The position numbers and the translations under genes were made by a program. From assembly GCA_950097015.1 (NCBI GenBank), contig CATNEN010000028.1, positions 434,001-498,000 of the forward strand: 64,000 nt of DNA, in the 5' to 3' direction. Below, one piece after another: positions 44,013 to 58,984 of this stretch. The stretch is from Macrostomum hystrix (taxonomy: Eukaryota; Animalia; Platyhelminthes). Numbering within the stretch: the stretch's first letter is position 1; every line of letters begins with the position of its first letter. The notes beneath the pieces are model-generated. The model was not told where the DNA came from. It made no database searches and saw only the letters and a program-made list of their open reading frames with translations.

Positions 44013-44409
44013 TTTGCGCGCAAACACAAAAAATAATTTCCAAGAAAGCCGCCGTCATTTATAGCCGCAGCTGGTATATTGCGACACTGTTTCCGATATT
44101 ATTTATGCCAGGTGAAAATTTATGTTTTACTCGGTGCATAGATGGTATTTAGTGAATGTAGGCCAGATGATAACATTCATTATCATTTAGGAGAGACTGC
44201 ACAGCTCTGTGACCGAATAAACAAAGTTTTTCTGGCCGCATCGGTTATGCATAGGGGGTAAACGTGATTGTGCAGCACCGTGCCAAAGTGTGATTTTTGT
44301 TGCAAGTAATATTGCACTGCAATTTAAACATTTTCAGGTAATTCTGATTAGAATCAGCGAGGCAGGACTCGCTTGTCATCACTGTGGCCTGCAGAGCGTT
44401 AGAAGAGAC

Positions 44410-44960
44410 TGTGGGGTGTCAGAGTATGTAGCGGGTGTCAGAGGATTCTGTAAGGTGTCAGGGTATGCATTGGGGTGTCAGAAGATTCTGTAAGGTGTCA
44501 GGGTATGCATTGGGGTGTCAGAAGATTCTGTAAGGTGTCAGGGTATGCATTGGGGTGTCAGAAGATTCTGTAAGGTGTCAGGGTATGCATTGGGGTGTCA
44601 GAAGATTCTGTAAGGTGTCAGGGTATGCATTGGGGTGTCAGGAGATTCTGTAAGGTGTCAGGGTATGCATTGGGGTGTCAGAAGATTCTGTAAGGTGTCA
44701 GGGTATGCATTGGGGTGTCAGAAGATTCTGTAAGGTGTCAGGGTATGCATTGGGGTGTCAGAAGATTCTGTAAGGTGTCAGGGTATGCATTTGAGTTTCA
44801 GAGGATTCTGTGAGGTGCCAGATGATTCAGCGGCAAGTCAGGGGATGCTGTGGAGTGTCAGAGGGTTCTGTGTGGTATCCTAGGAGTTTCGGGGTGTCAA
44901 AAGATGCTGTGGGATGTCGAGGGATGCTGTAAACGATGTCAGGAAGGCTTTTGGGATCAC
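44410..44960. repeat. 40-bp (2x20) minisatellite (ggggtgtcagaagattctgtaaggtgtcagggtatgcatt)
   Basis: Direct. Confidence 0.93.
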
Positions 44961-45270: not shown

Positions 45271-47323
45271 TCACAGCTTAGAAGCTGCGAAGCGGCTGGC
45301 AGACATAAAGCCGATGTCCTCGCTGATTGGCTGTCCGGTGGCCATCTCGGTCAGCAGCTGGCCAATCACAGGGCCCAGCTTGAAGCCGTGGCCTGAGGGG
45401 TGTTTGGGCAGCGATGGGCATATTTTTTCGTAGGAAAATTGAGGAAAAGTTCAAGAATCTGATAAGGATTATACAAGTACATCAGTCTGAGGATCTCTCC
45501 TCAGAGTAGTAAAGTCCAGTGGCATAGCCGCTTCCCGTGCAACAAGACTGTGTACATTAGCTCAGTACATGGACTTGGGGACTGACACACCAACCAAATT
45601 TCTTTCACAGCTGAGTGAAATGTGGCACAAGGGAATCTCAGTTAAAAAATTATAACAGAAAAAAAGCTTCACGACATAAGAGAATCAATCGGTTTATTCC
45701 TGCTATTCGCACCTGAGCAGCCGCACACAAAGACAATGTTCCGATGCTTCGGGTGCCTGTCGACAATCAGACCGCAGTCTGGCGTCATCTGCAATCATCG
45801 ACAAAAGTACAAGCGACCAGTATCAGAGCCGAACAATCTTACTATTGGGTAGCGAATCAGCTCACAGTGTAGATGCATTTCTCAGTTACCGCGGGCTCCG
45901 GGATCAGGTCGGGAAATCTTTTGAGCACAAACTCAGTCAGCTGGGGCAGGTAGGACGGCTGCCGCTGACTGGGAGTCTCGCGACGGTCCGGATCCACGTC
46001 TGGTCCGTCGTGCATGCAGATCTGTTTAACAGTAGAAAGAAAACGTTGGCTATTTGAAATACTCGAATTTTTCTTTTTTGTGTATCTCTTAAAATATTCA
46101 ACAAATCGACACGAAAGTCCAGAAACTTTCCGCCCTATCCTATGAAACAACTTTCAGGATCCCAAAACATCGCCATCGTCGAGATATTCAATGATTCTCG
46201 TCGGGGTGAATTTCATCATGGAACCATGTCAGCAATAAAATTTGCTCCTATTGTATTGATTTTATAGTTCATTTTTTAGCAAGATTAATTAAAATAAGGG
46301 TTTACACTGAGCAATGTTACTTGTCCTTGTCACCAGGGTCTTCGACAAGAATCAATGAATACCTCCACGATGCTGCACACCGCACACCTTGACCATGCCG
46401 GGGTACTCAAGCTCTGGAAGGCCGTAGACGTGAAATCCTTTCTCCTGAAAATCGAAGGTCGGCAACTTGTCGGGTCCGAAGCCGCCGCTGTCGCCGCCGT
46501 CAGCCGGTCGCTGTCGCCGCTGCCAGTACATGGCGGTGACGCCGATGGGACGCAGCGGCAGCCGCAGTCCCAGGCCGCCCAGCAACTGGCCAGCCCACGC
46601 ACCGACCGCCAGCACCACCGAGTCGGCCGTCAGCTGCTCAGCGGCCGAGAAGGCACCGCTACCACCGAGGTGGAGGCGGACGGAGCCGTCTGGCTGCGGC
46701 TCGACGCTGGTCACGCGGACGCAGTCGCGGAGGCGGCCGCCCAGCTGGGCCACTCGAGAGCGCAGCGCCTGCATGCACCTGTGGGTTGTGCCATAGACTA
46801 AATTAGATTTTCAACGTCTACGCTTCCCAGACAAAATCCTGAGTGCCGTGAGGTTTAGACTTGAATATAAAAGCCAATCAACTCACTTGTCGGCCAGCAA
46901 GATGCCAGCGCTCGGGTCGAGCACACAGTCTTCGAATTCTGCTAGTTGAGGAAATCGAGCAGACAACGATGAGCCAGTCAAGCGCTCAACGGGCATGGAG
47001 TTCGATTCCAGTACCTGAGTAATGTTCTGCAAGTACTCAGCCGAGCCAAGGGTGGCCATACCGCAGTTGATGAAGAGCCGCTGACCGCTCAGACTCTCCA
47101 GGCGACTCCACAGCGGAAAGGCCCGCCGCATCAGCCGAGCATACTCGACCTGTTCGTAGGCGTAGCGGGTGATGCGGCTGTGGCCGTGGCTGCTGCCCCG
47201 ACTGTGCGGCATCGGGAATTGCTCCAGCAGCGTCACCCGGTGGCCGAGCTCCAGCAGCTGCCACGCTGCGCTTAGTCCGTTGACACCGCCGCCAACCACC
47301 GCCACGTGGAGCTGCCGCTCTGC
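45271..47323 (-). CDS. PIPOX: Peroxisomal sarcosine oxidase / pipecolate oxidase paralog A (exons 46887-47323, 46388-46778, 45866-46021, 45713-45788, 45271-45392); ends ASKL*; start codon absent
   Basis: VAVVGGGVNG, SRGSSHGHSRITR, VKICMH, EKCIYT, TPD, GCSGHGFKLGPVIG; all junctions GT-AG and frame-consistent. Confidence 0.9.
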
Positions 47324-47325
47324 CT

Positions 47326-48600
47326 GCAAGTTGCAGTGATGTGCCAGGAGTTGCAGTGATGTGTCAGGAGTTGCAGTGATGTGCCAGGAGTTGCAGTGAT
47401 GTGCCAGGAGTTGCAGTGATGTGTCAGGGGTTGCAGTGATGTGTCAGGGGTTGCAGTGATGTGGCAGGAGTTGCAGCGATGTGTCAGGAGTAGCAGTGAG
47501 GTGTCTGGAGTTTCAATGAGGTTTTAAGAGTTGCAGTGATGTGTCAGGAGTTGCAGCGATGTGTCAGGAGTAGCAGTGAGGTGTCTGGAGTTTCAATGAG
47601 GTTTTAAGAGTTGCAGTGATGTGTCAGGAGTTGCAGCGATGTGTCAGGAGTTGCAGTGATGTGGCAGGAGTTGCAGTGAGGTGTCTCGAGTTTCAATGAG
47701 GTTTTAAGAGTTGCAGTGATGTGTCAGGAGTTGCAGTGATGTGGCAGGAGTAGCAGTGATGTGTCAGGAGTTGCAATGAGGTTTTAAGAGTTGCAGTGAT
47801 GTGTCAGGAGTTGCAGCGATGTGTCAGGAGTTGCAGTGATGTGGTAGGAGTTGCAGTGAGGTGTCTCGAGTTTCAATGAGGTTTTAAGAGTTGCAGTGAT
47901 GTGTCAGGAATTGCAGCGATGTGTCAGGAGTTGCAGTGATGTGGCAGGAGTAGCAGTGATGTGTCAGGAGTTGCAGCGATGTGTCAGGAGTAGCAGTGAT
48001 GTGGTAGGAGTTGCAGCGATGTGTCAGGAGTAGCAGTGATGTCTCAGGAGTTGCAGTGATGTGGCAGGAGTTGCAGCGATGTGTCAGGAGTTGCAGTGAG
48101 GTGTCTCGAGTTTCAATGAGGTTTTAAGAGTTGCTGCGATGTGTCAGGAGTAGCAGTGATGTGTCAGGAGTTGCAGTGATGTGGTAGGAGTTGCAGTGAG
48201 GTGTCTCGAGTTTCAATGAGGTTTTAAGAGTTGCAGTGATGTGTCAGGAGTTGCAGTGATGTGTCAGGAGTAGCAGCGATGTGTCAGAAGTAGCAGTGAG
48301 GTGTCAGGAGTTGCAATGAGGTTTTAAGAGTTGCAGTGATGTGTCAGGAGTAGCAGTGATGTGTCAGGAGTTGCAGCGATGTGTCAGGAGTTGCAGCGAT
48401 GTGTCAGAAGTAGCAGTGAGGTGTCAGGAGTAGCAGTGAGGTGTCAGGAGTAGCAGTGAAGTGTCAGAAGTAGCAGTGAGGTGTCAGGAGTAGCAGTGAG
48501 GTGTCAGGAGTAGCAGTGATGTGTCAGAAGTAGCAGTGAGGTGTCAGGAGTAGCAGTGAGGTGTCAGGAGTTGCAATGAGGTTTTAAGAGTTGCAGTGAG
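47326..48600. repeat. 20-bp minisatellite (ttgcagtgatgtgtcaggag), abutting the PIPOX-A first acceptor
   Basis: Direct. Confidence 0.96.
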
Positions 48601-49080
48601 GTATTTTCACATCTGTCTGTCGCTTTGAGAATCATTGATCATTTTTAGGACAAGCTTTTTTATTAACTACTGAGAAGTAAATGTTAGATTAATTTTAAGG
48701 GGGAAGTAATGTATCACTGTAAAAAATGACAATGAACAAGAAAATATGACAGACCTAGTTTGCTTGATCAGAAATTTTTTATCTCACAGAAGAAAAAAAC
48801 ACTGCTTCAATGACAATATTTATGAACAAAAAATCAGATGCACTAAAGAAAGAAAAAAATAGGATTTTCAAATTCAATATGTTTATTTTGACAAAAGAAC
48901 ATTGCAGTTGGAAGAGAAAAAACAATTAGTACAAGGGAAATAGTCACTAAGGGTGATAGGAAGAATAGCGATTTGGGAAGAGTCATAATTAAATAGTCAT
49001 GCGATGAAAATGTCAAATAAAAAATACGTTTCATAGAAAATTTCTTAGAATGTAAACAATTTCTTGAAGTTCAAAGCCCT

Positions 49081-52032
49081 TCACAGTCGGGAAGCTCTGA
49101 CTCCGTGCTCGAACCGACTAGCGGACATGAAGCCAACGTCCTCGCTGATTGGCTGCCCGGTGGCCATCTCGGCAAGGAGCTGGCCAATCACAGGGCCCAG
49201 CTTGAAGCCGTGGCCTGCGAGGAGGAAGGAGGGCAGTGGGGACGTTTAGAGGTCCACAAGCTGAGAGCAAATTGGCTGAGAGCTAATTGGCTGAGAGCTA
49301 ATTGGCTGAAAGCTAATTGGCTGTGAGCTAATTGGCTGAGAGCTAATTGGCTGAGAGCTAATTGGCTGTGAGCTAATTGGCTGAAAGCTAATTGGCTGAG
49401 AGCTAATTGGCTGAGAGCTAATTGGCTGAAAGCTAATTGGCTGAGAGCTAGTTGGCTGAGAGCTAACTGTGACTATATCTAGACCTGAAATAAGGTGCCG
49501 ATTTAATTTCCCTAAAAATGCACATCCCCTAACAAAAAATTCAACATTTTTTTACTTATAACAATATGTTTTTAAAGGTCAGTGGCGGAGCGGTTTAACG
49601 CCTTTGCCTCTTGCATGAAGTTCATTGAGCTCGATTCCGCGGTGTGGCCACATTCATATGGGGCGCAGCCGCGGAGAGAAGGCTTGGGGGCTTATCGTGC
49701 AATTTACGCCCCTGAGGGTCAACCTCCAAGGCACAGTGAAAGTGTTTCACTGCCTGACGATGAGAAGGTCAGGGCAGATGTACACACCTGTGTGAGAGTG
49801 TGCCTGCGCACAGTATCTGTGTGCGTGTGTGCTGAGGAGTCAGCGAAATGGGCATAACTGCCTCCTCGCTGGCTGCAGGTCTAGTGTCACCAAATACTGT
49901 GCCATTGCACGCAGCCCTGCTACAATTATTGTTTATTATTGTTCTGTACTTTCCTCGAAAGTTTCAATTACGAGCTACAATAAGCGAAAACAATTTCAAT
50001 TACCGATATGTATCGAAATATGTAGTTTAACCAGCTTAGAACCCTTTACCATACAAGAATATAAAATAAAACACAATAATCAGACTGGCGCACCTGAGCA
50101 GCCGCAGACGAACACAATGTTGCGATGCTTCGGGTGCCGGTCAACAATCAGGCCGCTGTCAGGAGTCAGCTGTGAATTGTAATGAGTTATTGATAATTTA
50201 GTAAAAAACTACAAAGTATTGCTAGTTTGGTGTGGGGACCCAACAAACGAAGCAGCTCACAGTGTAGATGCATTTCTCAGTTACCGCAGGCTCCGGGATC
50301 AGGTCGGGAAATCTTTTGAGCACAAACTCAGTCAGCTGGGGCAGGTAGGATGGCTGCCGCTGACTGGGAGTCTCGCGACGGTCCGGATCCAGGTCTGGTC
50401 CGTCGTGCATGCAGATCTGCAGTGGGCGAAACATGGGAATGAGAGTCCGAGGGGATGAGGATGTGGATGGGAATCTAGGGGATGAGGATGTGGATGGGAA
50501 TCTAGGGGATGAGGATGTGGATGGGAATCTAGGGGATGAGGATGTGGATGGGAATCTAGGGGATGAGGATGTGGATGGGAATCTAGGGGATGAGGATGTG
50601 GATGGGAATCTAGGGGATGAGGATGTGGATGGGAATCTAGGGGATGAGGATGTGGATGGGAATCTAGGGGATGAGGATGTGGATGGGAATCTAGGGGATG
50701 AGGATGTGGATGGGAATCTAGGGGATGAGGATGTGGATGGGAATTTAGGGGATGAGGATGTGGATGGGAATCTAGGGGATGAGGATGTGGATGGGAATCT
50801 AGGGGATGAGGATGTGGATGGGAATCTAGGGGATGAGGATGTAGTTGGGAATCTAGGGGATGAGGATGTGGATGGGAATCTAGGGGATGAGGATGTGGAT
50901 GGGAATCTAGGGGATGAGGATGTGGATGGGAATCTAGGGGATGAGGATGTGGATGGGAATCTAGGGGATGAGGATGTGGATGGGAATCTAGGGGATGAGG
51001 ATGTAGTTGGGAATCTAGGAGATGAAGATGTGGATGGGAATGAGGATGTAGTTTGTACTACATAATGATGCATGATGTGCTCACCTTGACCATGCCGGGG
51101 TACTCAAGCTCTGGCAGGCCGTAGACGTGGATCTTCTCGTCGACATAAACGAAGGTTGGAAACTTGTCGGGTCCGAAGCCGCCGCTGTTGTCGCCGTCAG
51201 CCGGCCGCTGTCGCCGCTGCCAGTACATGGCGGTGACGCCGATAGGTCGCAGCGGCAGCCGCAGTCCCAGGCCGCCCAGCAACTGGCCAGCCCACGCACC
51301 GACCGCCAGCACCACCGAGTCGGCCGTCAGCTGCTCAGCGGCCGAGGAGGCGCCGTTACCACCGAGGTGGAGGCGGACGGAGCCGTCTGGCTGCGGCTCG
51401 ACGCTGGTCACGCGGACGCAGTCGCGGAGGCGGCCGCCCAGCTGGGCCACTCGAGAGCGCAGCGCCTGCATGCACCTGTGGGTTGTGCCATATACTAAAT
51501 TAGATTTTCAACGTCTACGCTTCCCAGACAAAATCCTGAGTGCCGTGAGGTTAAGACATGAATATAGAAGCCAATCAACTCACTTGTCGGCCAGCAAGAT
51601 GCCAGCGCTCGGGTCGAGCACACAGTCTTCGAATTCTGCTAGACGCGGAAATCGAGCAGACACAGACTTGCCTGTCAGCCTTGCAAACGGCAGGTCGTTC
51701 GATTCCAGCACGCGACCAATGCCGTCCAAATATTCCTTCGTGCCCAGGGTGGCCATGCCGCAGTTAAAGAAGAGCCGCTGACCGCTCAGACTCTCCAGGC
51801 GACTCCACAGCGGAAAGGCCCGCCGCATCAGCCGAGCATACTCGACCTGCTCGTAGGCGTAGCGGGTGATGCGGCTGTGGCCGTGGCTGCTGCCCCGACT
51901 GTGCGGCATCGGGAACTGCTCCAGCAGCGTCACCCGGTGGCCGAGCTCCAGCAGCTGCCACGCTGCGCTTAGTCCGTTGACACCGCCTCCAACCACCGCC
52001 ACGTGGAGCTGCCGTTGCTCTGTCGAGTCCGC
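49081..52032 (-). CDS. PIPOX: PIPOX/sarcosine oxidase paralog B (exons 51584-52032, 51085-51475, 50261-50416, 50094-50169, 49081-49214); ends ASRL*; start codon absent
   Basis: Same motifs; exon sizes 449/391/156/76/134 are frame-consistent. Confidence 0.9.
49262..49468. repeat. 15-bp minisatellite (gagctaattggctga) in PIPOX-B last intron
   Basis: Direct. Confidence 0.93.
49578..49940 (+). mobile_element. tRNA-derived SINE family 2 copy in PIPOX-B last intron
   Basis: Box A tggcggagcgg, box B-like gctcgattcc, A/T tail; close match to 14250-14610. Confidence 0.85.
50449..51055. repeat. 27-bp minisatellite (gggatgaggatgtggatgggaatctag) filling PIPOX-B intron 2
   Basis: Direct. Confidence 0.96.
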
Positions 52033-52723
52033 CTGAGGGTCGTAGAGGACGCCAAAGACAAATATATTTGTGAGCTGTACTAAACAGCCTTGGCAAATGG
52101 CTGCCCCCGCACTGACTAATGAGTTATAAGGTCACGCATTTAGTGAGACACATGGCCATAGACAGTGCCTGTGGCGTCCATTCAGTGGTGGAGTATAGGC
52201 CATAGACAGTCCTCTGCGCCCCATTAAGCAGTGGAAGGTTCAGAAGTGGGAGTTTTGTCTCAGTGTTGGGACTTTAGGCCATAGACAATCCTCTGGTGTC
52301 TACTCTTCATTGTCGAAATCAGCCAGACGAAAGGAAAAAGATAAAACACATTTTTTCCCGACGCCTTAATCTCCACGGTAACATATCGAGAAAATTTCAT
52401 TTCTTCTTTAAAGCAAGTGAATGGCTAATATAGTCAGTAATGCTTCAGAAAGGTAAAACACCTGTGCAATTAAAAACAATAAATTGTAGAAAAATGATTG
52501 CTCTAAAAATGTAGAAAATAGAAATCAAGTGATTGAATCAATTAATACTGCTATATAATTGTCACTTACTTAGCAAAAATTGATTTTTTTATTGCCAATA
52601 AAAACGATTGCTACTGAAATCAGAAAGCTTATTCTACTTAAACTTCCATGATAAAATCAGAGAAAACCCAGTTTAAAAGTCGTTAAAGTGCATCGGACAA
52701 TTATCCCTCATTGGCGGCGACAT

Positions 52724-55359
52724 TCAGGCCGACCCGCTCTGGGCGAACCGGCTGGCGGACATGAAGCCAACGTCCTCGCTGATTGGCTGTCCGGTGGCCA
52801 TCTCGGCCAGGAGCTGGCCAATCACAGGGCCCAGCTTGAAGCCGTGGCCTGCGGCATTAGCAGATGGATAAGGGTTACAGATTGAGCTGTGGGCGAGCTT
52901 TCTGGACTCTCTCAGATACTTTCAGTTGCGATCTGCTTTTAAATAGTTCTTCAAGCTCCACAAGGCTCATCATCTGCCCTCAATATACCATCAGCTTCCG
53001 CAGTTTCTTATCAGCTCCCCCAGCTTCATCATCAGCTCCCTCAGCTTCATCATCAGCTCCATCAGCTTCATCATCAGCTCCCTCTGCTTCAGCTCCTTCA
53101 GCTTCATCATCAGCTCCATCAGCTTCAGCTCCTTCAGCTTCAACATCAGCTCCATCAGCTTCATCATCAGCTAAATCAGCTTAATCATCAGCTCCCTCAG
53201 CTTCAGCTCCTTCAGCTTCATCATCAGCTCCATCAGCTTCATCATCAGCTCCCTCAGCTTCATCAACAGCTCCTTCAGCTTCATCATCAGCTCCATCAGC
53301 TTCATCTTTAGCTCCCTCAGCTTCATCATCAGCTCCATCAGCTTCATCTTCAGCTCCTCAATGTACTCATCAGCTCCCCCAGGTTCATCATGAGCTCCCT
53401 CAGCTTCATCATCAGCTCCATCAGCTTCATTATCCTCAGCTTCTCCCTAGTTACAGCGCGGCTCACCGGAGCAGCCGCAGACGAACAAGATGCTCGGGTG
53501 TTCAGGATGCCGATCCACAATCAGGCCGCTGTCGGGTGTCATCTGAAGGTCAAAAAACCAAGCTCAAAGTGACAGTTTTGATCAGAGAAGGCTAAGGGGA
53601 CATATATAAGAAGTGACCTCACAGTGAACATGCAGTTCTCAGTGACTGCGGGCTCATCCAGCAGGTCCGGGAAGCGCTGACGCACAAAATCGACAAGAGC
53701 CGGCATGTAGAACGGCTGCCGCTGTTCCGCAGTCTCCCTGGCGTCCGGGTCAACATCGGGACCGTCGTGGTAGCAGATCTGCAAGGTCTGGCGATCCGTC
53801 AAAAGTGCTTTGGATGGCAGAGAAACTGCATGAGGAAATGCGAGTCAAGCTGCAGTCACCTTGACCATGCCAGGGTACTCAAGCTCTGGCAGCCCATAGA
53901 GCTGGATCTTCTCGTCGACGTAAACAAGGGTTGGAAACTTGTCGGGTCCGAAGCCACCGATGTCGTCGCCGTCAGCCGGCCGCTGTCGCCGCTGCCAGTA
54001 CATGGCGGTGACGCCGATAGGTCGCAGCGGCAGCCGCAGTCCCAGGCCGCCCAGCAACTGGCCAGCCCACGCACCGACCGCCAGCACCACCGAGTCGGCC
54101 GTCAGCTGCTCAGCGGCCGAGAAGGCACCGCTACCACCGAGGTGGAGGCGGACGGAGCCGTCTGGCTGCGGCTCGACGCTGGTCACGCGGACGCAGTCGC
54201 GGAGGCGGCCGCCCAGCTGGGCCACTCGAGAGCGCAGCGCCTGCATGCACCTGCGGGTTGGGCCATAGTGTTGCGTCCGTGCACTTCGCAGTGTGGACAC
54301 TGCCCCCTCCCCACGCGGCATTCGGTACGCCGAGGCCAGGAGACTTGTTATCAGGGGCTTAAGCCTTTGTAAGCAGTTTTTATTTTTGTTTTGATTTCGA
54401 TGTGCGCTGATTGGCTGTGCCGCCCCGTCTGGCCTTCGCCTCGAGCTGCCCTTTCCCCAGCTGCGCAGTGATTGGCCAGTGGGTGGCTGGGTTGGGGTGG
54501 TGGGGCGGGGGCCGTGGGGTGGGTTTGGGTGCCTACCCCGGCCCCAGGTCAGAACTGTCAGACCCGCCAGCCGCAAACGGAAATTAGTCGCAACTGAAGT
54601 AAGCCGCCGCCTCGTCGTCTCATTTCTTTCGGGTGCCATAGAGGGGCCGTACGCGTGTCCTAACCCGGACCCTCTAAGGCGCATCCACTTCGGGGATTCG
54701 CGAGTTCAACAATAGAATAAATATTCTTTTCTAAGGTCTACGTTTTGAAGATAAGACTTGTCCTAGGTGCCAAACTAATTTACTGGTAAAATTTTGACTA
54801 CTTCGAGCCAAGACTGACATTCGATAGTTATTTTAACACGCCGGTGCCATATTGGAAATCAGAATCATTTATTACTGGCATCAGAATGCGCTATAACCTA
54901 CTCGACTCACTTGTCGGCAAGCAAGATGCCGGCGCTCGGATCTAGCACGCAGTCGCCAAAGCCGTCAAGGCGTGGAAATCGGCTAGACAAATTGTCTCCA
55001 GACAGCCTCTCAAATGGCATTGAGTTGGATTCCATCACGTGGCTGATGTTATTCAGAAACTCAGCCGAGCCCAGGGCAGCCATGCCGCAGTTGATGAAGA
55101 GCCGCTGACCGCTCAGACTCTCCAGGCGACTCCACAGCGGAAAGGCCCGCCGCATCAACCGGGTGTAGCCGGCAGCCTTGTAGGCGTAGCGGGTGATGCG
55201 GCTGTGACCGTGGCTGCTGCCCCGACTGTGCGGCATCGGGAACTGCTCCAGCAGCGTCACCCGGTGGCCGAGCTCCAGCAGCTGCCACGCTGTGCTGAGT
55301 CCGTTGACACCGCCGCCAACCACTGCCACGTGGAGCTGCTGTGGCGCTGTCGAGTCCGC
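52724..55359 (-). CDS. PIPOX: PIPOX/sarcosine oxidase paralog C (exons 54911-55359, 53860-54250, 53623-53778, 53467-53542, 52724-52848); ends QSGSA*, no PTS1; start codon absent
   Basis: Same motifs (VKICYH, ENCMFT, GHGFK); exon sizes 449/391/156/76/125 are frame-consistent. Confidence 0.9.
52995..53440. repeat. Degenerate 15-21-bp minisatellite (tcagcttcatcatcagctcc) in PIPOX-C last intron
   Basis: Direct. Confidence 0.9.
54269..54711 (-). mobile_element. Solo LTR (443 bp) inserted in PIPOX-C intron 1
   Basis: TGTTG...CAACA termini, perfect 4-bp TSD ATAG at 54265-54268 and 54712-54715; paralogs A and B show the empty site ccatag|actaaatt; AATAAA on the minus strand near 54380. Confidence 0.8.
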
Positions 55360-55486
55360 CTGAGGGCCATTGCGAGGGTTTCGGCCATAGACAAAATAGC
55401 ATGCAAGAATTTTTGCGACATCTACTCTACGTGTGTTTCGCACTGTGCCATTTTAATTACACCTGAGACGTTTGGACTATATGTAC

Positions 55487-55683
55487 AGGTGTCCAGTCCA
55501 TGGACTGGAAATGGCGCAACACCTAACTCTCAATTACCCTAGCTAAAGCTCGTAATCATTAAACAGCTAAAGCATAAAGTTAAGTATCTTGCCTAAGGAA
55601 ACTAATTGTTCTAGTAGAGTACGGGAATCGAACCACCGACCTTTAAGCCGCGAGTCCGTTTATCTAACCATTAGGCTGCAACC
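55487..55683 (-). mobile_element. SINE family 1 copy upstream of PIPOX-C
   Basis: Reverse complement reads ggttgcagcctaatggttag...ggttcgattcccg...ccttaggcaagatacttaac. Confidence 0.7.
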
Positions 55684-56157
55684 TTTTTATATGACTATAA
55701 AATGCTTAGAAAACACAGTGCATTGAGTTTAAAGTGTGTACCTACGGGTGCTACAGCTCAGTAGGGCGAGCAACATATTGTAAAACAAGTATAATTAATT
55801 CAACAACTAATTGCAACAATTATAGATTCTTGAATTCCGCTGGTTACAAAAACTGAAGGTGGAGCATTGTACTAAGCTGTGTTTTATTTTATTTCTTATA
55901 TAAAACTACACTTTATTAGTTCATTGTTTCCTTTTAGGTAACAAAGCGCGGCTTGGATAGTAGTACGAACTGTACCTGTCGTACTAAAAAGCGAAATTTA
56001 TCGAAAAATGTTAAAGCTGTGTGACAAAAAAACAAAGTGGCTGCAGAAAGACTTGAACTAAAAGCAATGACACTAGAATGAAAACCGAAAAGCATCTTAG
56101 GTGTTAAAGACGCTGACAGAAATGGATAGAAAAAACAACAACTGACCGAGAAGTGCA

Positions 56158-56640
56158 AATGACACTCGATTGACAACCAGATATGACACTCGATTGACAA
56201 CCAGATATGACACTCGATTGACAACCAGATATGACACTCGATTGACAACCAGATATGACACTCGATTGACAACCAGATATGACACTCGATTGACAACCAG
56301 ATGTGACACTCGATTGACAACCAGATATGACACTCGATTGACAACCAGATATGACACTCGATTGACAACCAGATATGACACTCGATTGACAACCAGATAT
56401 GACACTCGATTGACAACCAGATGTGACACTCGATTGACAACCAGATATGACACTCGATTGACAACCAGATATGACACTCGATTGACAACCAGATGTGACA
56501 CTCGATTGACAACCAGATGTGACACTCGATTGACAACCAGATATGACACTCGATTGACAACCAGATATGACACTCGATTGACAACCAGATATGACACTCG
56601 ATTGACAACCAGATATGACACCTGATTGACAAGCACTTGT
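56158..56640. repeat. 24-bp minisatellite (gacactcgattgacaaccagatat)
   Basis: Direct. Confidence 0.96.
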
Positions 56641-56929
56641 CAACACTTGATTGACAAGCAGAGACTACACAGGAAGAAATTAGTTTTCCAGGAAGACACG
56701 CAAGCAACATTACAAATGTTAAACCAATGAGACTCAGCACAGACGTTAGAGTGATCAACGACTTACGTAATAAATGTAAAATATAAAAATACACTCGAAT
56801 GACAAAATAAACGAAATAAACGTAAAATAACAGCAATAGAACATACATAGCAGAGAAAAAATACGACAAACAATTTTGGAGCAGAAATCCATAACTCTGT
56901 ACAAAACACAGCAAAATCAATTTGATCAG

Positions 56930-58700
56930 TCAGGCTAGATCAGAGTCAACAGCACCACTGAGTTCTCCAATGACTCGCATCAGCCGTTGCCGCTCTAGCC
57001 AGTCATCGATGCCCGCACCTAGGAGGTCAGCCTCGGTCAGCAGGGGAAAAGTATCGGCGTCAACGTCCTGAGCACGCAGGGCGGCCAGATGATTGGAGAG
57101 GCCGAATTTGCCTAGCAACAGAGCCAATCGGTCACTGTTACAAGCCGCATCGCTGACAGATTGTTCCACTTCGCCAATAGCTCGAGTGTTGGCCTGCTTC
57201 TCAAAGCGGAACAACGGATTCCGACAGCCGTTGCCTCGCCTAACCAAGAAACGCGGCGCAAATGTTGAAAACATTTTCGGCGATGCACTTGTAGACCCGC
57301 AGTAGTCATCAGTCGATGATGGCACACGAGCCAAAAATTTGTGCATCTCGTCGAGCGCCTGGCGCCAATCGGGCGGCGCCGCAACCCGGCGCTCGGCAGC
57401 TGTCACGTGACTATCAACGAACTCGGGACCGCCTAGCCGAGTGTTGCGCCAGCTGGACTGCGGATCGGCCGCCTTGGCCGAGCAGGAGAAGCGGACTGTC
57501 TTCTTTGACGACGTCAACGGGACAGCTTCGGGCAACGGGCAAGGCGAGGCCGACTGCGAGGAACTACTCGGCGGAGGGCGACAGCAGGCCAGAAGAATGT
57601 CCCTGAAACTGCTGGCCTCTCTAACGATGTCGCTATTGCTTCGGCAAGTCGGTCCGTTGACATCCCCTTCCGTTAGCTGAATAGCTTCAGATTGAGTTTT
57701 ACCTGTTGGCATCGTACTGGCAGGCGCCTCATCGCCATCCGAGTCGGTGTCGCTATCATCGCTGCCAGCGGGGAGCCGGCTAGCCAGTCGGCGATGGCCC
57801 AACAGGCGGGCCAGGCGGCGCGGTGTCAGGCCGTTGACATCGCGCGCTGCGCCCGGAGCTCCGGCCTCGTCAATCAGCAGGCTGCAGACCTGGTAGCGGC
57901 CGCCGCTGGCTGCCGCGTGAAGCGGCGATGTGATGCCGCCAGCCGAGGACGCCGAGAAGCCGCGCGCCAACAGGTACCGCGCAGCTCCGACGGCACCGTG
58001 AAACGCGGCCGGGCTGAGTGGCGCCCCGACGCAGCGGGCAGCTTCGAGGCCGCCGTTTTCATGCTCCCCTGGGCCGTCAGCGCCGAGCTGGCTGAAAATT
58101 TCGTCGAATTCGTCGTCCCCGCCGCTTTTGGCTTGCCGCACATCGGCCTCGTCTATAGTGGCGCGCGAGTCTTCGCTTTCTCTGTCGTCACTGTCGAATT
58201 CACCATCCTTGACTTCATTTTCGACGCTGTCTAGACTGGCGCTGGGCACCTCCGCGCCGCCGCCGCTGCCGACAAGGCCGAAGCAGGACATGGCCAATCC
58301 GGCCAGGTACTCCATCATTCGGACGTGATTTCCAGCAGCTGCCAGCGCGAATCCGTCGGCTCCGTAGGCGGTGACTCGCTTGGTGTCCACGCGTCCTTGA
58401 CAACCGCCAGATTCTACTAAGGCACGCGCCGCATCTAGACGGCCCAGACGACAGGCGACGTGAAACGGACTCCAGCCCAGCAGGTTGACGGGATCCGGGT
58501 CCAGGCGGTGTTGGTCGATCAGCTGACGGATGCCGCTAGCGCAACCACCAGCCGCAGCGTAGTGCAGCGCCGTGTTGCCGTGATTGTCCAAGCGTTGCAA
58601 ATCTTCCGAGGCCGACGGCGCAGACAGGCGAGCCAAGATGGCGTCCTGATTGCCCTTCAAAAGCACCGAGAAGACGACTGTGCCGCTGGTTGAAGTCTTC
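56930..58700 (-). CDS. Ankyrin-repeat + C-terminal SAM domain protein (ANKS3/ANKS6/USH1G-like architecture); 5' end unresolved
   Basis: GNTALHYAAAGG, GWSPFHVACRLG, GITSPLHAAASGG ankyrins split by an acidic insert; SAM LGKFGLSNHLAALRAQDVDADTFPLLTEADLLGAGI; ORF start is GTG, not ATG. Confidence 0.8.
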
Positions 58701-58984
58701 AATTGTTGCAAGAACACGTGGGAAAATGCTTTTTCATTTTTCTAAGTGCCTTCATTAGCCATAAAATTTCTTATCTTATGGATTGGTCTAAGATTTGACC
58801 GTTAATGGCTTAACACGCAAGATCGTATAGCCAAATTTAGCAAATCATAGACAGGTGGGCAAAGATATGATTTTGTGTGATATTTCAAAGACATGTGCAA
58901 ATATATTTCACTTAGTACTGAAAGCTCTTGTATAAATCGAAGGTTTGATAAGGATTTTTTAGTGAGGTGACTGCGTAAATTGAC

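What the first reader, a model, noticed from the sequence alone, without database searches (positions are those of the whole stretch)
45271..55359. All three PIPOX paralogs lack a start codon and begin at a phase-0 acceptor: initiator AUG probably donated by the spliced leader
Seen: the first exons start cttgcag|GCA GAG (A, 47323), ccctcag|GCG GAC (B, 52032) and ccctcag|GCG GAC (C, 55359). The next in-frame Met lies after the essential GxGxxG FAD motif, and nearby upstream ATGs are out of frame. I found no ATG|GT mini-exon in the 690-bp C-to-B gap. All other exons are intact. Established: flatworm spliced leaders end in AUG, which can serve as the initiator Met. Inference: trans-splicing yields MADSTEQRQLHVAVVGGG / MAERQLHV, a normal-length PIPOX N-terminus, so translation depends on trans-splicing.
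Basis: partly seen in the sequence, partly recalled or inferred. Interest (0 to 1): 0.75.

Follow-up and report, generated by a model that had tools for sequence, protein, structure and literature searches.

The report
Spliced leader supplies PIPOX start codons
Three neighbouring copies of a peroxisomal sarcosine/pipecolate oxidase gene in this Macrostomum-type flatworm have no start codon of their own, and assembled RNA shows the trans-spliced leader, which ends in AUG, joined exactly in front of codon 2 of two of them; this habit is already known in flatworms, so these are further examples rather than a new mechanism.

Summary
Genes A (47323..45271), B (52032..49081) and C (55359..52724) lie on the minus strand. 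Each is an intact five-exon gene of the DAO/sarcosine-oxidase (PIPOX-like) family. Exon 1 of each starts at an AG acceptor in phase 0, with no in-frame ATG before the upstream stop and none before the GxGxxG motif.

With the shared G they equal the last 17 nt of the published Macrostomum lignano spliced leader (...ACTCAATTTATTGCATG). A second contig in each run carries the same leader and exactly the seven B/C differences, so C is trans-spliced too. The leader AUG is the only AUG in the leader and is in frame, giving M-ADSTEQRQLHV (B) and M-ADSTAPQQLHV (C).

No junction contig was seen for A. Its M-AERQLHV start is inferred from acceptor anatomy. Initiation at the leader AUG is also inferred, not shown.

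The mechanism is known (Cheng et al. 2006, cited in PMC12582326 and PMC9851317) and has been noted for Macrostomum (PMC10468722). This scan had already confirmed it for other genes of the same genome (POLR3K, D2HGDH). Verdict: real, well supported and ordinary for flatworms.

The parts
54911..55359 (-). Gene C exon 1. It starts in phase 0 directly after AG (55361-55360), has no genomic start codon, and encodes ADSTAPQQLHVAVVGGGVNG...
   Evidence: The SL-bearing contig carrying all seven C-specific letters was laid at 51936-52033.
52724..55359 (-). Gene C, whole: exons 55359-54911, 54250-53860, 53778-53623, 53542-53467 and 52848-52724. That is 398 genomic codons plus a stop. It ends ...GSA, with no PTS1.
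   Evidence: The exon 1-2 junction was seen in a spliced contig of run X1.
51584..52032 (-). Gene B exon 1. It starts in phase 0 directly after AG (52034-52033), has no genomic start codon, and encodes ADSTEQRQLHVAVVGGGVNG...
   Evidence: A loose end at 52033 in X3, X4 and X5 equals the SL 3' end, on a contig with 0 mismatches.
49081..52032 (-). Gene B, whole: exons 52032-51584, 51475-51085, 50416-50261, 50169-50094 and 49214-49081. That is 401 genomic codons plus a stop. It ends ...SRL, which is PTS1-like.
   Evidence: Junctions 1-2, 2-3 and 4-5 are confirmed by loose ends at 51581, 51085 and 52851.
46887..47323 (-). Gene A exon 1. The predicted acceptor AG is at 47325-47324, in phase 0, and the exon encodes AERQLHVAVVGGGVNG... 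The junction with the leader was not observed.
   Evidence: A-specific exon 1 letters are present in the RNA contig of X1 (47015-47044).
45271..47323 (-). Gene A, whole: exons 47323-46887, 46778-46388, 46021-45866, 45788-45713 and 45392-45271. That is 393 genomic codons plus a stop. It ends ...SKL, the canonical PTS1.
47329..48599 (.). A 20-bp minisatellite (63.5 copies) fills most of the B-to-A spacer and abuts A's acceptor. On the gene strand it gives a 179-nt AG-free zone and a CTGAC branch-like site at -41.
52035..52723 (-). C-to-B spacer, holding C's 3' UTR and B's outron. AATAAA lies at 52593-52588 and C's contigs end at 52561-52610. Low-depth contigs cover 52262-52523. None cover 52035-52229.

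Best explanation
A, B and C are three tandem, functional paralogs of a peroxisomal sarcosine/L-pipecolate oxidase-like flavoenzyme (DAO family). Their pre-mRNAs are processed by spliced-leader trans-splicing. The 35-nt leader, whose last three bases are AUG, is joined to the AG acceptor that immediately precedes codon 2. In the mature mRNA the leader AUG is the first and only upstream AUG and is in frame, so it serves as the initiator Met. Without trans-splicing, no AUG lies ahead of the FAD-binding GxGxxG motif, so a functional protein cannot be made. Shown here: the gene models, the absence of a genomic start codon, and the leader-to-exon junctions of B and C in RNA. Inferred: the junction of A, initiation at the leader AUG, and any polycistronic origin of the three mRNAs.
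For: Absence of a genomic start.

Domain completeness: the DAO profile starts at position 1 within 6-10 residues of the exon start. Exon 1 is colinear with MSOX residues 5-150, exon 2 with 152-232 and exon 5 with 345-377.

Intact genes under purifying selection: for the models, and dN/dS of 0.25-0.30 for all pairs.

RNA evidence: in X3, X4 and X5 two 114-nt contigs per run end at 52033 with the loose letters ATGCAATAAATTGAGT on the + strand. Their reverse complement plus the shared G equals positions 19-35 of the published M. lignano leader (PMC8629364; check). These letters occur nowhere in the 64-kb window. One contig has 0 mismatches to B. The other has 7 mismatches; the four listed (51966, 51970, 51988, 51997) fall on B/C differences, and 7 is the total number of B/C differences in that stretch. 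Depth is zero in intron 1 and at 52035-52229, and splice junctions are spanned, so the runs are RNA.

The leader has a single ATG, at its 3' end.

Literature: all reported flatworm leaders end in ATG and can supply the start codon (PMC12582326). More than 40 S. mansoni cDNAs need it (PMC9851317). [quoted passage not shown]
Against: No junction contig for A was listed or laid over 51966-51997 in X3-X5; depth there is the sum of the B-type and C-type contigs only.

A has three AGs within 6 nt. The second would put the leader AUG out of frame and give a 16-residue peptide.

The RNA evidence is assembled contigs from one study, not raw reads, so minor cis-spliced isoforms cannot be excluded.

Only 17 nt of the leader are seen, and the leader gene is not in the window.

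No protein-level or ribosome-profiling evidence for the start site was available.

The B and C acceptors (CCTCAG) do not fit the most enriched published trans-acceptor motif YTNCAG. That motif is found at only 44% of sites.
Confidence: 0.85

Rival explanations
1. The real first exon lies further upstream. A cis-spliced exon carrying an ATG is joined to the same acceptors, and the trans-spliced form is a minor by-product.
For: C has one ATG|GT at -312 (55671). Flatworm acceptors are often shared between cis- and trans-splicing (PMC12582326). Contigs drop rare variants.
Against: The only loose end at 52033 in three runs is the leader. The leader-bearing contigs have depths of 12-34, like the downstream exon contigs at 19-33. 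No contig covers 52035-52229. None of B's upstream ATGs is followed by GT, and A has no ATG in the 700 nt upstream.
Confidence: 0.05
It is either silent or decaying, or it is trans-spliced at another AG so that the frame is lost or the N-terminus differs (M-RQLHV).
For: No A-type 5' contig was seen. Three AGs lie within 6 nt, and the second is out of frame. A's ancestral first four codons were replaced by the edge of a minisatellite.
Against: A is intact and under purifying selection, with dN/dS of 0.25-0.27 against B and C. It keeps an SKL peroxisomal signal. A-specific exon 1 letters occur in RNA contigs: X1 at 47015-47044, and the A-type letter at 51850 in X1, X4 and X5. The predicted AG is the first after a 179-nt AG-free zone, has a CTGAC at -41 and fits YTNCAG.
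Confidence: 0.2
3. Translation starts at the first genomic in-frame AUG (the Met in FPMPHS) or at a non-AUG codon, and the leader AUG is skipped.
For: The leader AUG has a pyrimidine at -3 (TTGC-AUG-G), and it lies only 32 nt from the cap (sequence).
Against: A start at FPMPHS would remove the beta-alpha-beta FAD-binding motif that the DAO profile and MSOX structures require. The residues before that Met are conserved among paralogs. The +4 base is G in all three genes. Published work shows the flatworm leader AUG functions as an initiator (cited).
Confidence: 0.04

Closest known systems
Flatworm mRNAs that take their initiator Met from the 3'-terminal AUG of the spliced leader (Cheng, Cohen, Ndegwa and Davis 2006, J Biol Chem 281:733; cited in PMC12582326, PMC9851317 and PMC5832876)
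   Same: The leader ends in AUG. It is joined at an acceptor in phase 0 directly before codon 2. There is no genomic AUG ahead of the conserved N-terminus. The leader AUG is in frame.
   Different: The published set is from Schistosoma mansoni. Here the species is a free-living Macrostomum-type flatworm, the genes are PIPOX-like oxidases, and the start-less state is shared by three tandem paralogs.
Macrostomum lignano SL trans-splicing (Ustyantsev and Berezikov 2021, PMC8629364; Wiberg et al. 2023, PMC10468722)
   Same: The 17 leader nucleotides seen on the contigs are identical to the 3' end of the published 35-nt leader. A's acceptor fits YTNCAG. Spacing between the genes is within the published operon threshold after subtracting repeats.
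   Different: In the passages read, those papers do not analyse genes that depend on the leader AUG. One only remarks that the final ATG is likely a start codon. The B and C acceptors are CCTCAG, not YTNCAG.
Peroxisomal sarcosine oxidase / L-pipecolate oxidase (PIPOX) and bacterial monomeric sarcosine oxidase (MSOX; PDB 1el5, 7exs)
   Same: There is a DAO domain from profile position 1 and a GxGxxG motif. The exons are colinear with MSOX along their length, including the C-terminal HGFK region. Length is about 394-402 residues. A ends in SKL and B in SRL, both peroxisomal signals.
   Different: Identity to MSOX is low (exon 1 E about 1e-17). C ends in GSA, without a PTS1. Substrate is untested. 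Orthology to PIPOX was not tested by a tree.
Earlier follow-ups of this scan on the same genome (POLR3K, s1-339194; D2HGDH, s1-300447)
   Same: The same mechanism and the same kind of evidence: leader on assembled RNA at a start-less first exon.
   Different: Different genes on other pieces of the genome. Here it is a tandem paralog trio, with one member (A) using a different acceptor.

Membership tests
Leader-AUG-dependent flatworm mRNA (Cheng et al. 2006 class) | The species' spliced leader ends in AUG. | tested here: met
   The published M. lignano leader ends ...TTGCATG. The contig loose end plus the shared G reads ...ACTCAATTTATTGCATG.
Leader-AUG-dependent flatworm mRNA (Cheng et al. 2006 class) | The leader is joined in RNA to the acceptor directly before the ORF. 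| tested here: met
   Met for B (0-mismatch contig) and for C (contig with the 7 C-specific letters) in X3, X4 and X5. Not observed for A.
Leader-AUG-dependent flatworm mRNA (Cheng et al. 2006 class) | The leader AUG is in frame with the conserved ORF, with no stop between. | tested here: met
   The acceptors are in phase 0, and the translations run M-ADSTEQRQLHV..., M-ADSTAPQQLHV... and M-AERQLHV....
Leader-AUG-dependent flatworm mRNA (Cheng et al. 2006 class) | No genomic in-frame AUG that could give a complete protein. | tested here: met
   no Met between the upstream stop and the GxGxxG motif; the first Met is at residue 42 (B, C) or 38 (A) of exon 1.
Leader-AUG-dependent flatworm mRNA (Cheng et al. 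2006 class) | Translation actually initiates at the leader AUG. | not testable with these tools
   This needs N-terminal proteomics, ribosome profiling or reporter assays.
MSOX/PIPOX branch of the DAO family (PF01266) | DAO domain with an N-terminal GxGxxG FAD-binding fold. | tested here: met
   Exon 1 matches PF01266 at E 9e-23 to 1e-21 and exon 2 at 4e-9.
MSOX/PIPOX branch of the DAO family (PF01266) | Closest solved relatives are sarcosine oxidases, colinear over the full length. | tested here: met
   Exon 1 aligns to MSOX 5-150, exon 2 to 152-232 and exon 5 to 345-377. The exon 5 match is weak (E 0.13).
MSOX/PIPOX branch of the DAO family (PF01266) | C-terminal peroxisomal targeting signal 1 (for PIPOX). 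| tested here: inconclusive
   A ends in SKL and B in SRL, but C ends in GSA.
MSOX/PIPOX branch of the DAO family (PF01266) | Orthology to animal PIPOX by full-length search or tree. | not tested
   The exon 1 word search sees only 80-255 aa proteins and gave one 41% hit.
SL-resolved operon (criteria of PMC8629364) | Same-strand neighbours, with the downstream gene trans-spliced and a repeat-adjusted spacer under 1 kb. | tested here: met
   From C's 3' end (about 52561-52610) to B's acceptor (52032) is about 530-580 nt. From B's AATAAA (48887-48882) to A's acceptor is about 1,560 nt, of which the minisatellite takes 1,271, leaving about 290 nt. A's trans-splicing is not shown.
SL-resolved operon (criteria of PMC8629364) | One polycistronic precursor spans the genes. 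| tested here: inconclusive
   Low-depth contigs lie at 52262-52523 in X4 and X5, but none at 52035-52229. Contigs carry no strand information.

The most novel reading that the evidence does not exclude
The start-less, leader-dependent state is itself under selection. It was inherited through two tandem duplications. It was then re-established in frame at a new acceptor in paralog A, after a minisatellite replaced the ancestral first codons. The three paralogs would be made from one polycistronic precursor, so that only correctly trans-spliced monocistrons can be translated. This would be an obligatory coupling of processing and translation in an operon of paralogs.
Probability: 0.25. Interest if true: 0.35.

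Novelty: new member of a known kind. Interest (0 to 1): 0.2.

Why it matters
The main value is for annotation. Gene finders that demand a genomic ATG will truncate these enzymes at the Met after the FAD-binding motif, or invent upstream exons. Knowing that the leader supplies the AUG gives the correct proteins of 394, 402 and 399 residues. It adds a metabolic enzyme family, and a case of three paralogs sharing the trait, to the list of leader-AUG-dependent genes in a free-living flatworm model. In that model, leader dependence also matters for transgene design. It does not change what is known about the mechanism.

Tried and rejected
- I searched the window for the published 35-nt leader with up to 3 mismatches and found none. 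Its last 12 and 16 nt are also absent. The leader therefore comes from elsewhere, as expected for trans-splicing.
- The word search of the protein collection with A's exon 1 gave only one distant 137-aa hit. Full-length relatives are outside its length window, so A's N-terminus could not be checked in annotated proteins.
- I did not run the large profile search.
- I suspected a tRNA-like or SINE element at 55640-55720 upstream of C. ARAGORN and Rfam, at gathering score and at E up to 1, found nothing, so I dropped it.
- The two 'joints' inside B's exon 1 (51479>51742 and 51662>51742) are most simply read as paralog contigs (A or C type). Their divergent middle part does not align at 90% likeness. 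I do not take them as splices.
- The Cheng et al. 2006 paper itself is not held and is cited through three papers that describe it.
- I considered an ATG|GT mini-exon. There is none for A or B. C has one candidate at -312 that RNA does not support.
Full report
**What is in the sequence**

On the minus strand of 45271-55359 lie three tandem genes. I fixed the exon borders by shared anchors and checked them.

- Each gene has five exons with GT..AG borders and no internal stop.
- The coding lengths are 1182, 1206 and 1197 nt, that is 394, 402 and 399 codons including the stop.
- Exon 1 of each matches Pfam DAO (PF01266) from profile position 1, at residue 10 (B, C) or 6 (A), with E 1e-21 to 9e-23. 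Exon 2 continues the same profile.
- Against solved structures, the best matches are monomeric sarcosine oxidases. Exon 1 aligns to MSOX residues 5-150, exon 2 to 152-232 and exon 5 to 345-377 of 386.
- A ends in SKL and B in SRL, both peroxisomal PTS1-type ends. C ends in GSA.
- Pairwise dN/dS, summed exon by exon, is 0.25-0.30, so all three copies are under purifying selection.
- Identity is mosaic. A and B differ at 3 of 156 positions in exon 3, and B and C at 14 of 390 in exon 2. This suggests gene conversion.

**The observation**

The first coding exons begin right after an AG: cttgcag|GCAGAG for A, and ccctcag|GCGGAC for both B and C.

- Reading upstream in frame, each reaches a stop after 41, 33 and 31 codons without any Met.
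- The first in-frame Met is the one in FPMPHS, after VVGGGVNG.
- A has no ATG in any frame in the 700 nt upstream.
- B has 15 upstream ATGs in its 700 nt, none followed by GT.
- C has a single ATG|GT at -312.

The three cases are not independent, because B and C share their acceptor context by descent. In A, the first four ancestral codons were replaced by the edge of a 1.27-kb minisatellite (47329-48599) and a different AG is used.

**RNA evidence**

One search for sequencing runs gave runs of two studies. I laid four of them (X1, X3, X4, X5) on 51060-52980. That stretch is free of tandem repeats and holds B's exons 1-2, the whole C-to-B spacer and C's last exon.

The runs behave as RNA:
- Depth is zero in B's intron 1 (51515-51579) and at 52035-52229.
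- Loose ends at 51581, 51085 and 52851 read on into the next exon of B. I matched the longer loose ends to the window.
- An X1 contig joins C's exon 1 end (54915-54944) to exon 2.

At B's acceptor, X3, X4 and X5 each have two 114-nt contigs that end at 52033 and run on with ATGCAATAAATTGAGT on the + strand. On the gene strand this reads ACTCAATTTATTGCAT. It is followed by the G that the leader and the acceptor AG share, and then by GCGGACTCG.

That sequence equals positions 19-35 of the published 35-nt M. lignano spliced leader, CGGTCTCTTACTGCGAAGACTCAATTTATTGCATG (PMC8629364; check). The 16 letters occur nowhere in the 64-kb window on either strand.

One contig of each pair has no mismatch to B. 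The other has seven. The four that the tool lists (51966 C>T, 51970 T>G, 51988 T>G, 51997 C>T) are positions where C differs from B, and seven is the total number of B/C differences in that stretch. The second contig is therefore C's 5' end.

The leader-bearing contigs have depths of 12-34, similar to the downstream exon contigs at 19-33. No other loose end is listed at the acceptor. One further loose end in the call was not shown.

**What follows**

The leader contains a single ATG, its last three bases. Joined in phase 0, it gives:
- M-ADSTEQRQLHVAVVGGG for B
- M-ADSTAPQQLHVAVVGGG for C
- M-AERQLHVAVVGGG for A, if the predicted AG is used

These put 6-10 residues before the first beta strand, against 4 in MSOX. 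By the scanning model, the leader AUG is the initiator. This step is inferred.

It rests on published work that the flatworm leader's 3' AUG functions as an initiator Met and is required by more than 40 S. mansoni cDNAs. That work is Cheng et al. 2006, which is not held here and is described in PMC12582326, PMC9851317 and PMC5832876. [quoted passage not shown]

**Paralog A**

No A-type 5' contig was laid. Over 51966-51997 the depth in X3-X5 is exactly the sum of the B-type and C-type contigs.

A is nevertheless transcribed:
- An X1 contig carries A-specific exon 1 letters (47015-47044).
- The A-type letter at 51850 is the one assembled in X1, X4 and X5.

A's predicted acceptor is the first AG after a 179-nt AG-free zone. 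It has a CTGAC at -41 and fits the published trans-acceptor motif YTNCAG. Two more AGs follow within 6 nt. The second would put the leader AUG out of frame, and the third would give M-RQLHV.

**Context**

The genes meet the published M. lignano operon criterion of same strand, trans-spliced, and a repeat-adjusted spacer under 1 kb (PMC8629364).
- C's contigs end 22-71 nt beyond an AATAAA (52593-52588), about 530-580 nt before B's acceptor.
- The B-to-A spacer is about 1,560 nt, of which 1,271 are minisatellite.
- Low-depth contigs at 52262-52523 in two runs hint at transcription through the C-to-B spacer. They are unstranded, and nothing covers 52035-52229, so a polycistronic precursor is not shown.
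- An ankyrin/SAM ORF lies upstream of C on the same strand.

**Comparison and novelty**

In what could be tested, the B and C mRNAs fit the known class of leader-AUG-dependent flatworm mRNAs. The leader ends in AUG, it is joined in RNA, it is in frame, and no usable genomic AUG exists. The one defining feature I could not test is initiation itself.

Earlier follow-ups of this scan reported the same for POLR3K and D2HGDH on other pieces of this genome. Several more first-stage notes propose it for other genes. I did not test those.

The finding is thus real and well supported. It is a new member of a known kind and matters mainly for correct annotation. The only mildly new angles are untested. 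One is that the trait persists across three paralogs, with a re-made in-frame acceptor in A. The other is the possible operon of paralogs.

I did not send the joined protein models to any search, so orthology to animal PIPOX rests on domain, colinearity and PTS1 evidence.

Noticed in passing
window 47329-48599: A 20-bp minisatellite (63.5 copies, 83% matches) directly abuts A's acceptor. On the gene strand each unit carries a CTGAC branch-like motif and almost no AG, so the array itself serves as A's outron and AG-exclusion zone.
   Followed up: partly
window about 52150-52290 and 55385-55395 (minus strand): The motif TGTCTATGGCC occurs three times in the C-to-B spacer and once 25 nt before C's acceptor. 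It could be a shared regulatory or repeat remnant.
   Followed up: no
window 52724-52760, 49081-49100 and 45271-45290: The C-termini differ. A ends in SKL and B in SRL, both peroxisomal PTS1-type ends. C ends in GSA, so C may not be peroxisomal.
   Followed up: no
window exons of A, B and C: Identity between paralogs is mosaic: A-B exon 3 has 3 of 156 differences, B-C exon 2 has 14 of 390, and B-C exon 3 has 50 of 156. This suggests gene conversion among the tandem copies.
   Followed up: partly
loose ends at window 51179 and 52798: RNA contigs with PIPOX-like exon sequence run on into letters that are not in this window. At least one further paralog or homeolog is expressed from elsewhere in the genome.
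   Followed up: no
window 56930-58717 (-): A 595-codon open frame with ankyrin repeats and a weak SAM domain ends about 1.57 kb upstream of C on the same strand. A 24-bp minisatellite (56159-56662) lies between them.
   Followed up: partly
window 50450-51041, 52989-53434, 49260-49466 and 44401-44821: Minisatellites also fill introns of B (27-bp unit; 15-bp unit) and C (21/42-bp unit), and the region downstream of A (40-bp unit). Repeat arrays are a general feature of this locus.
   Followed up: no
window 55669-55671 (minus strand): This is the only ATG followed by GT upstream of any of the three genes, 312 nt before C's acceptor.
   Followed up: partly
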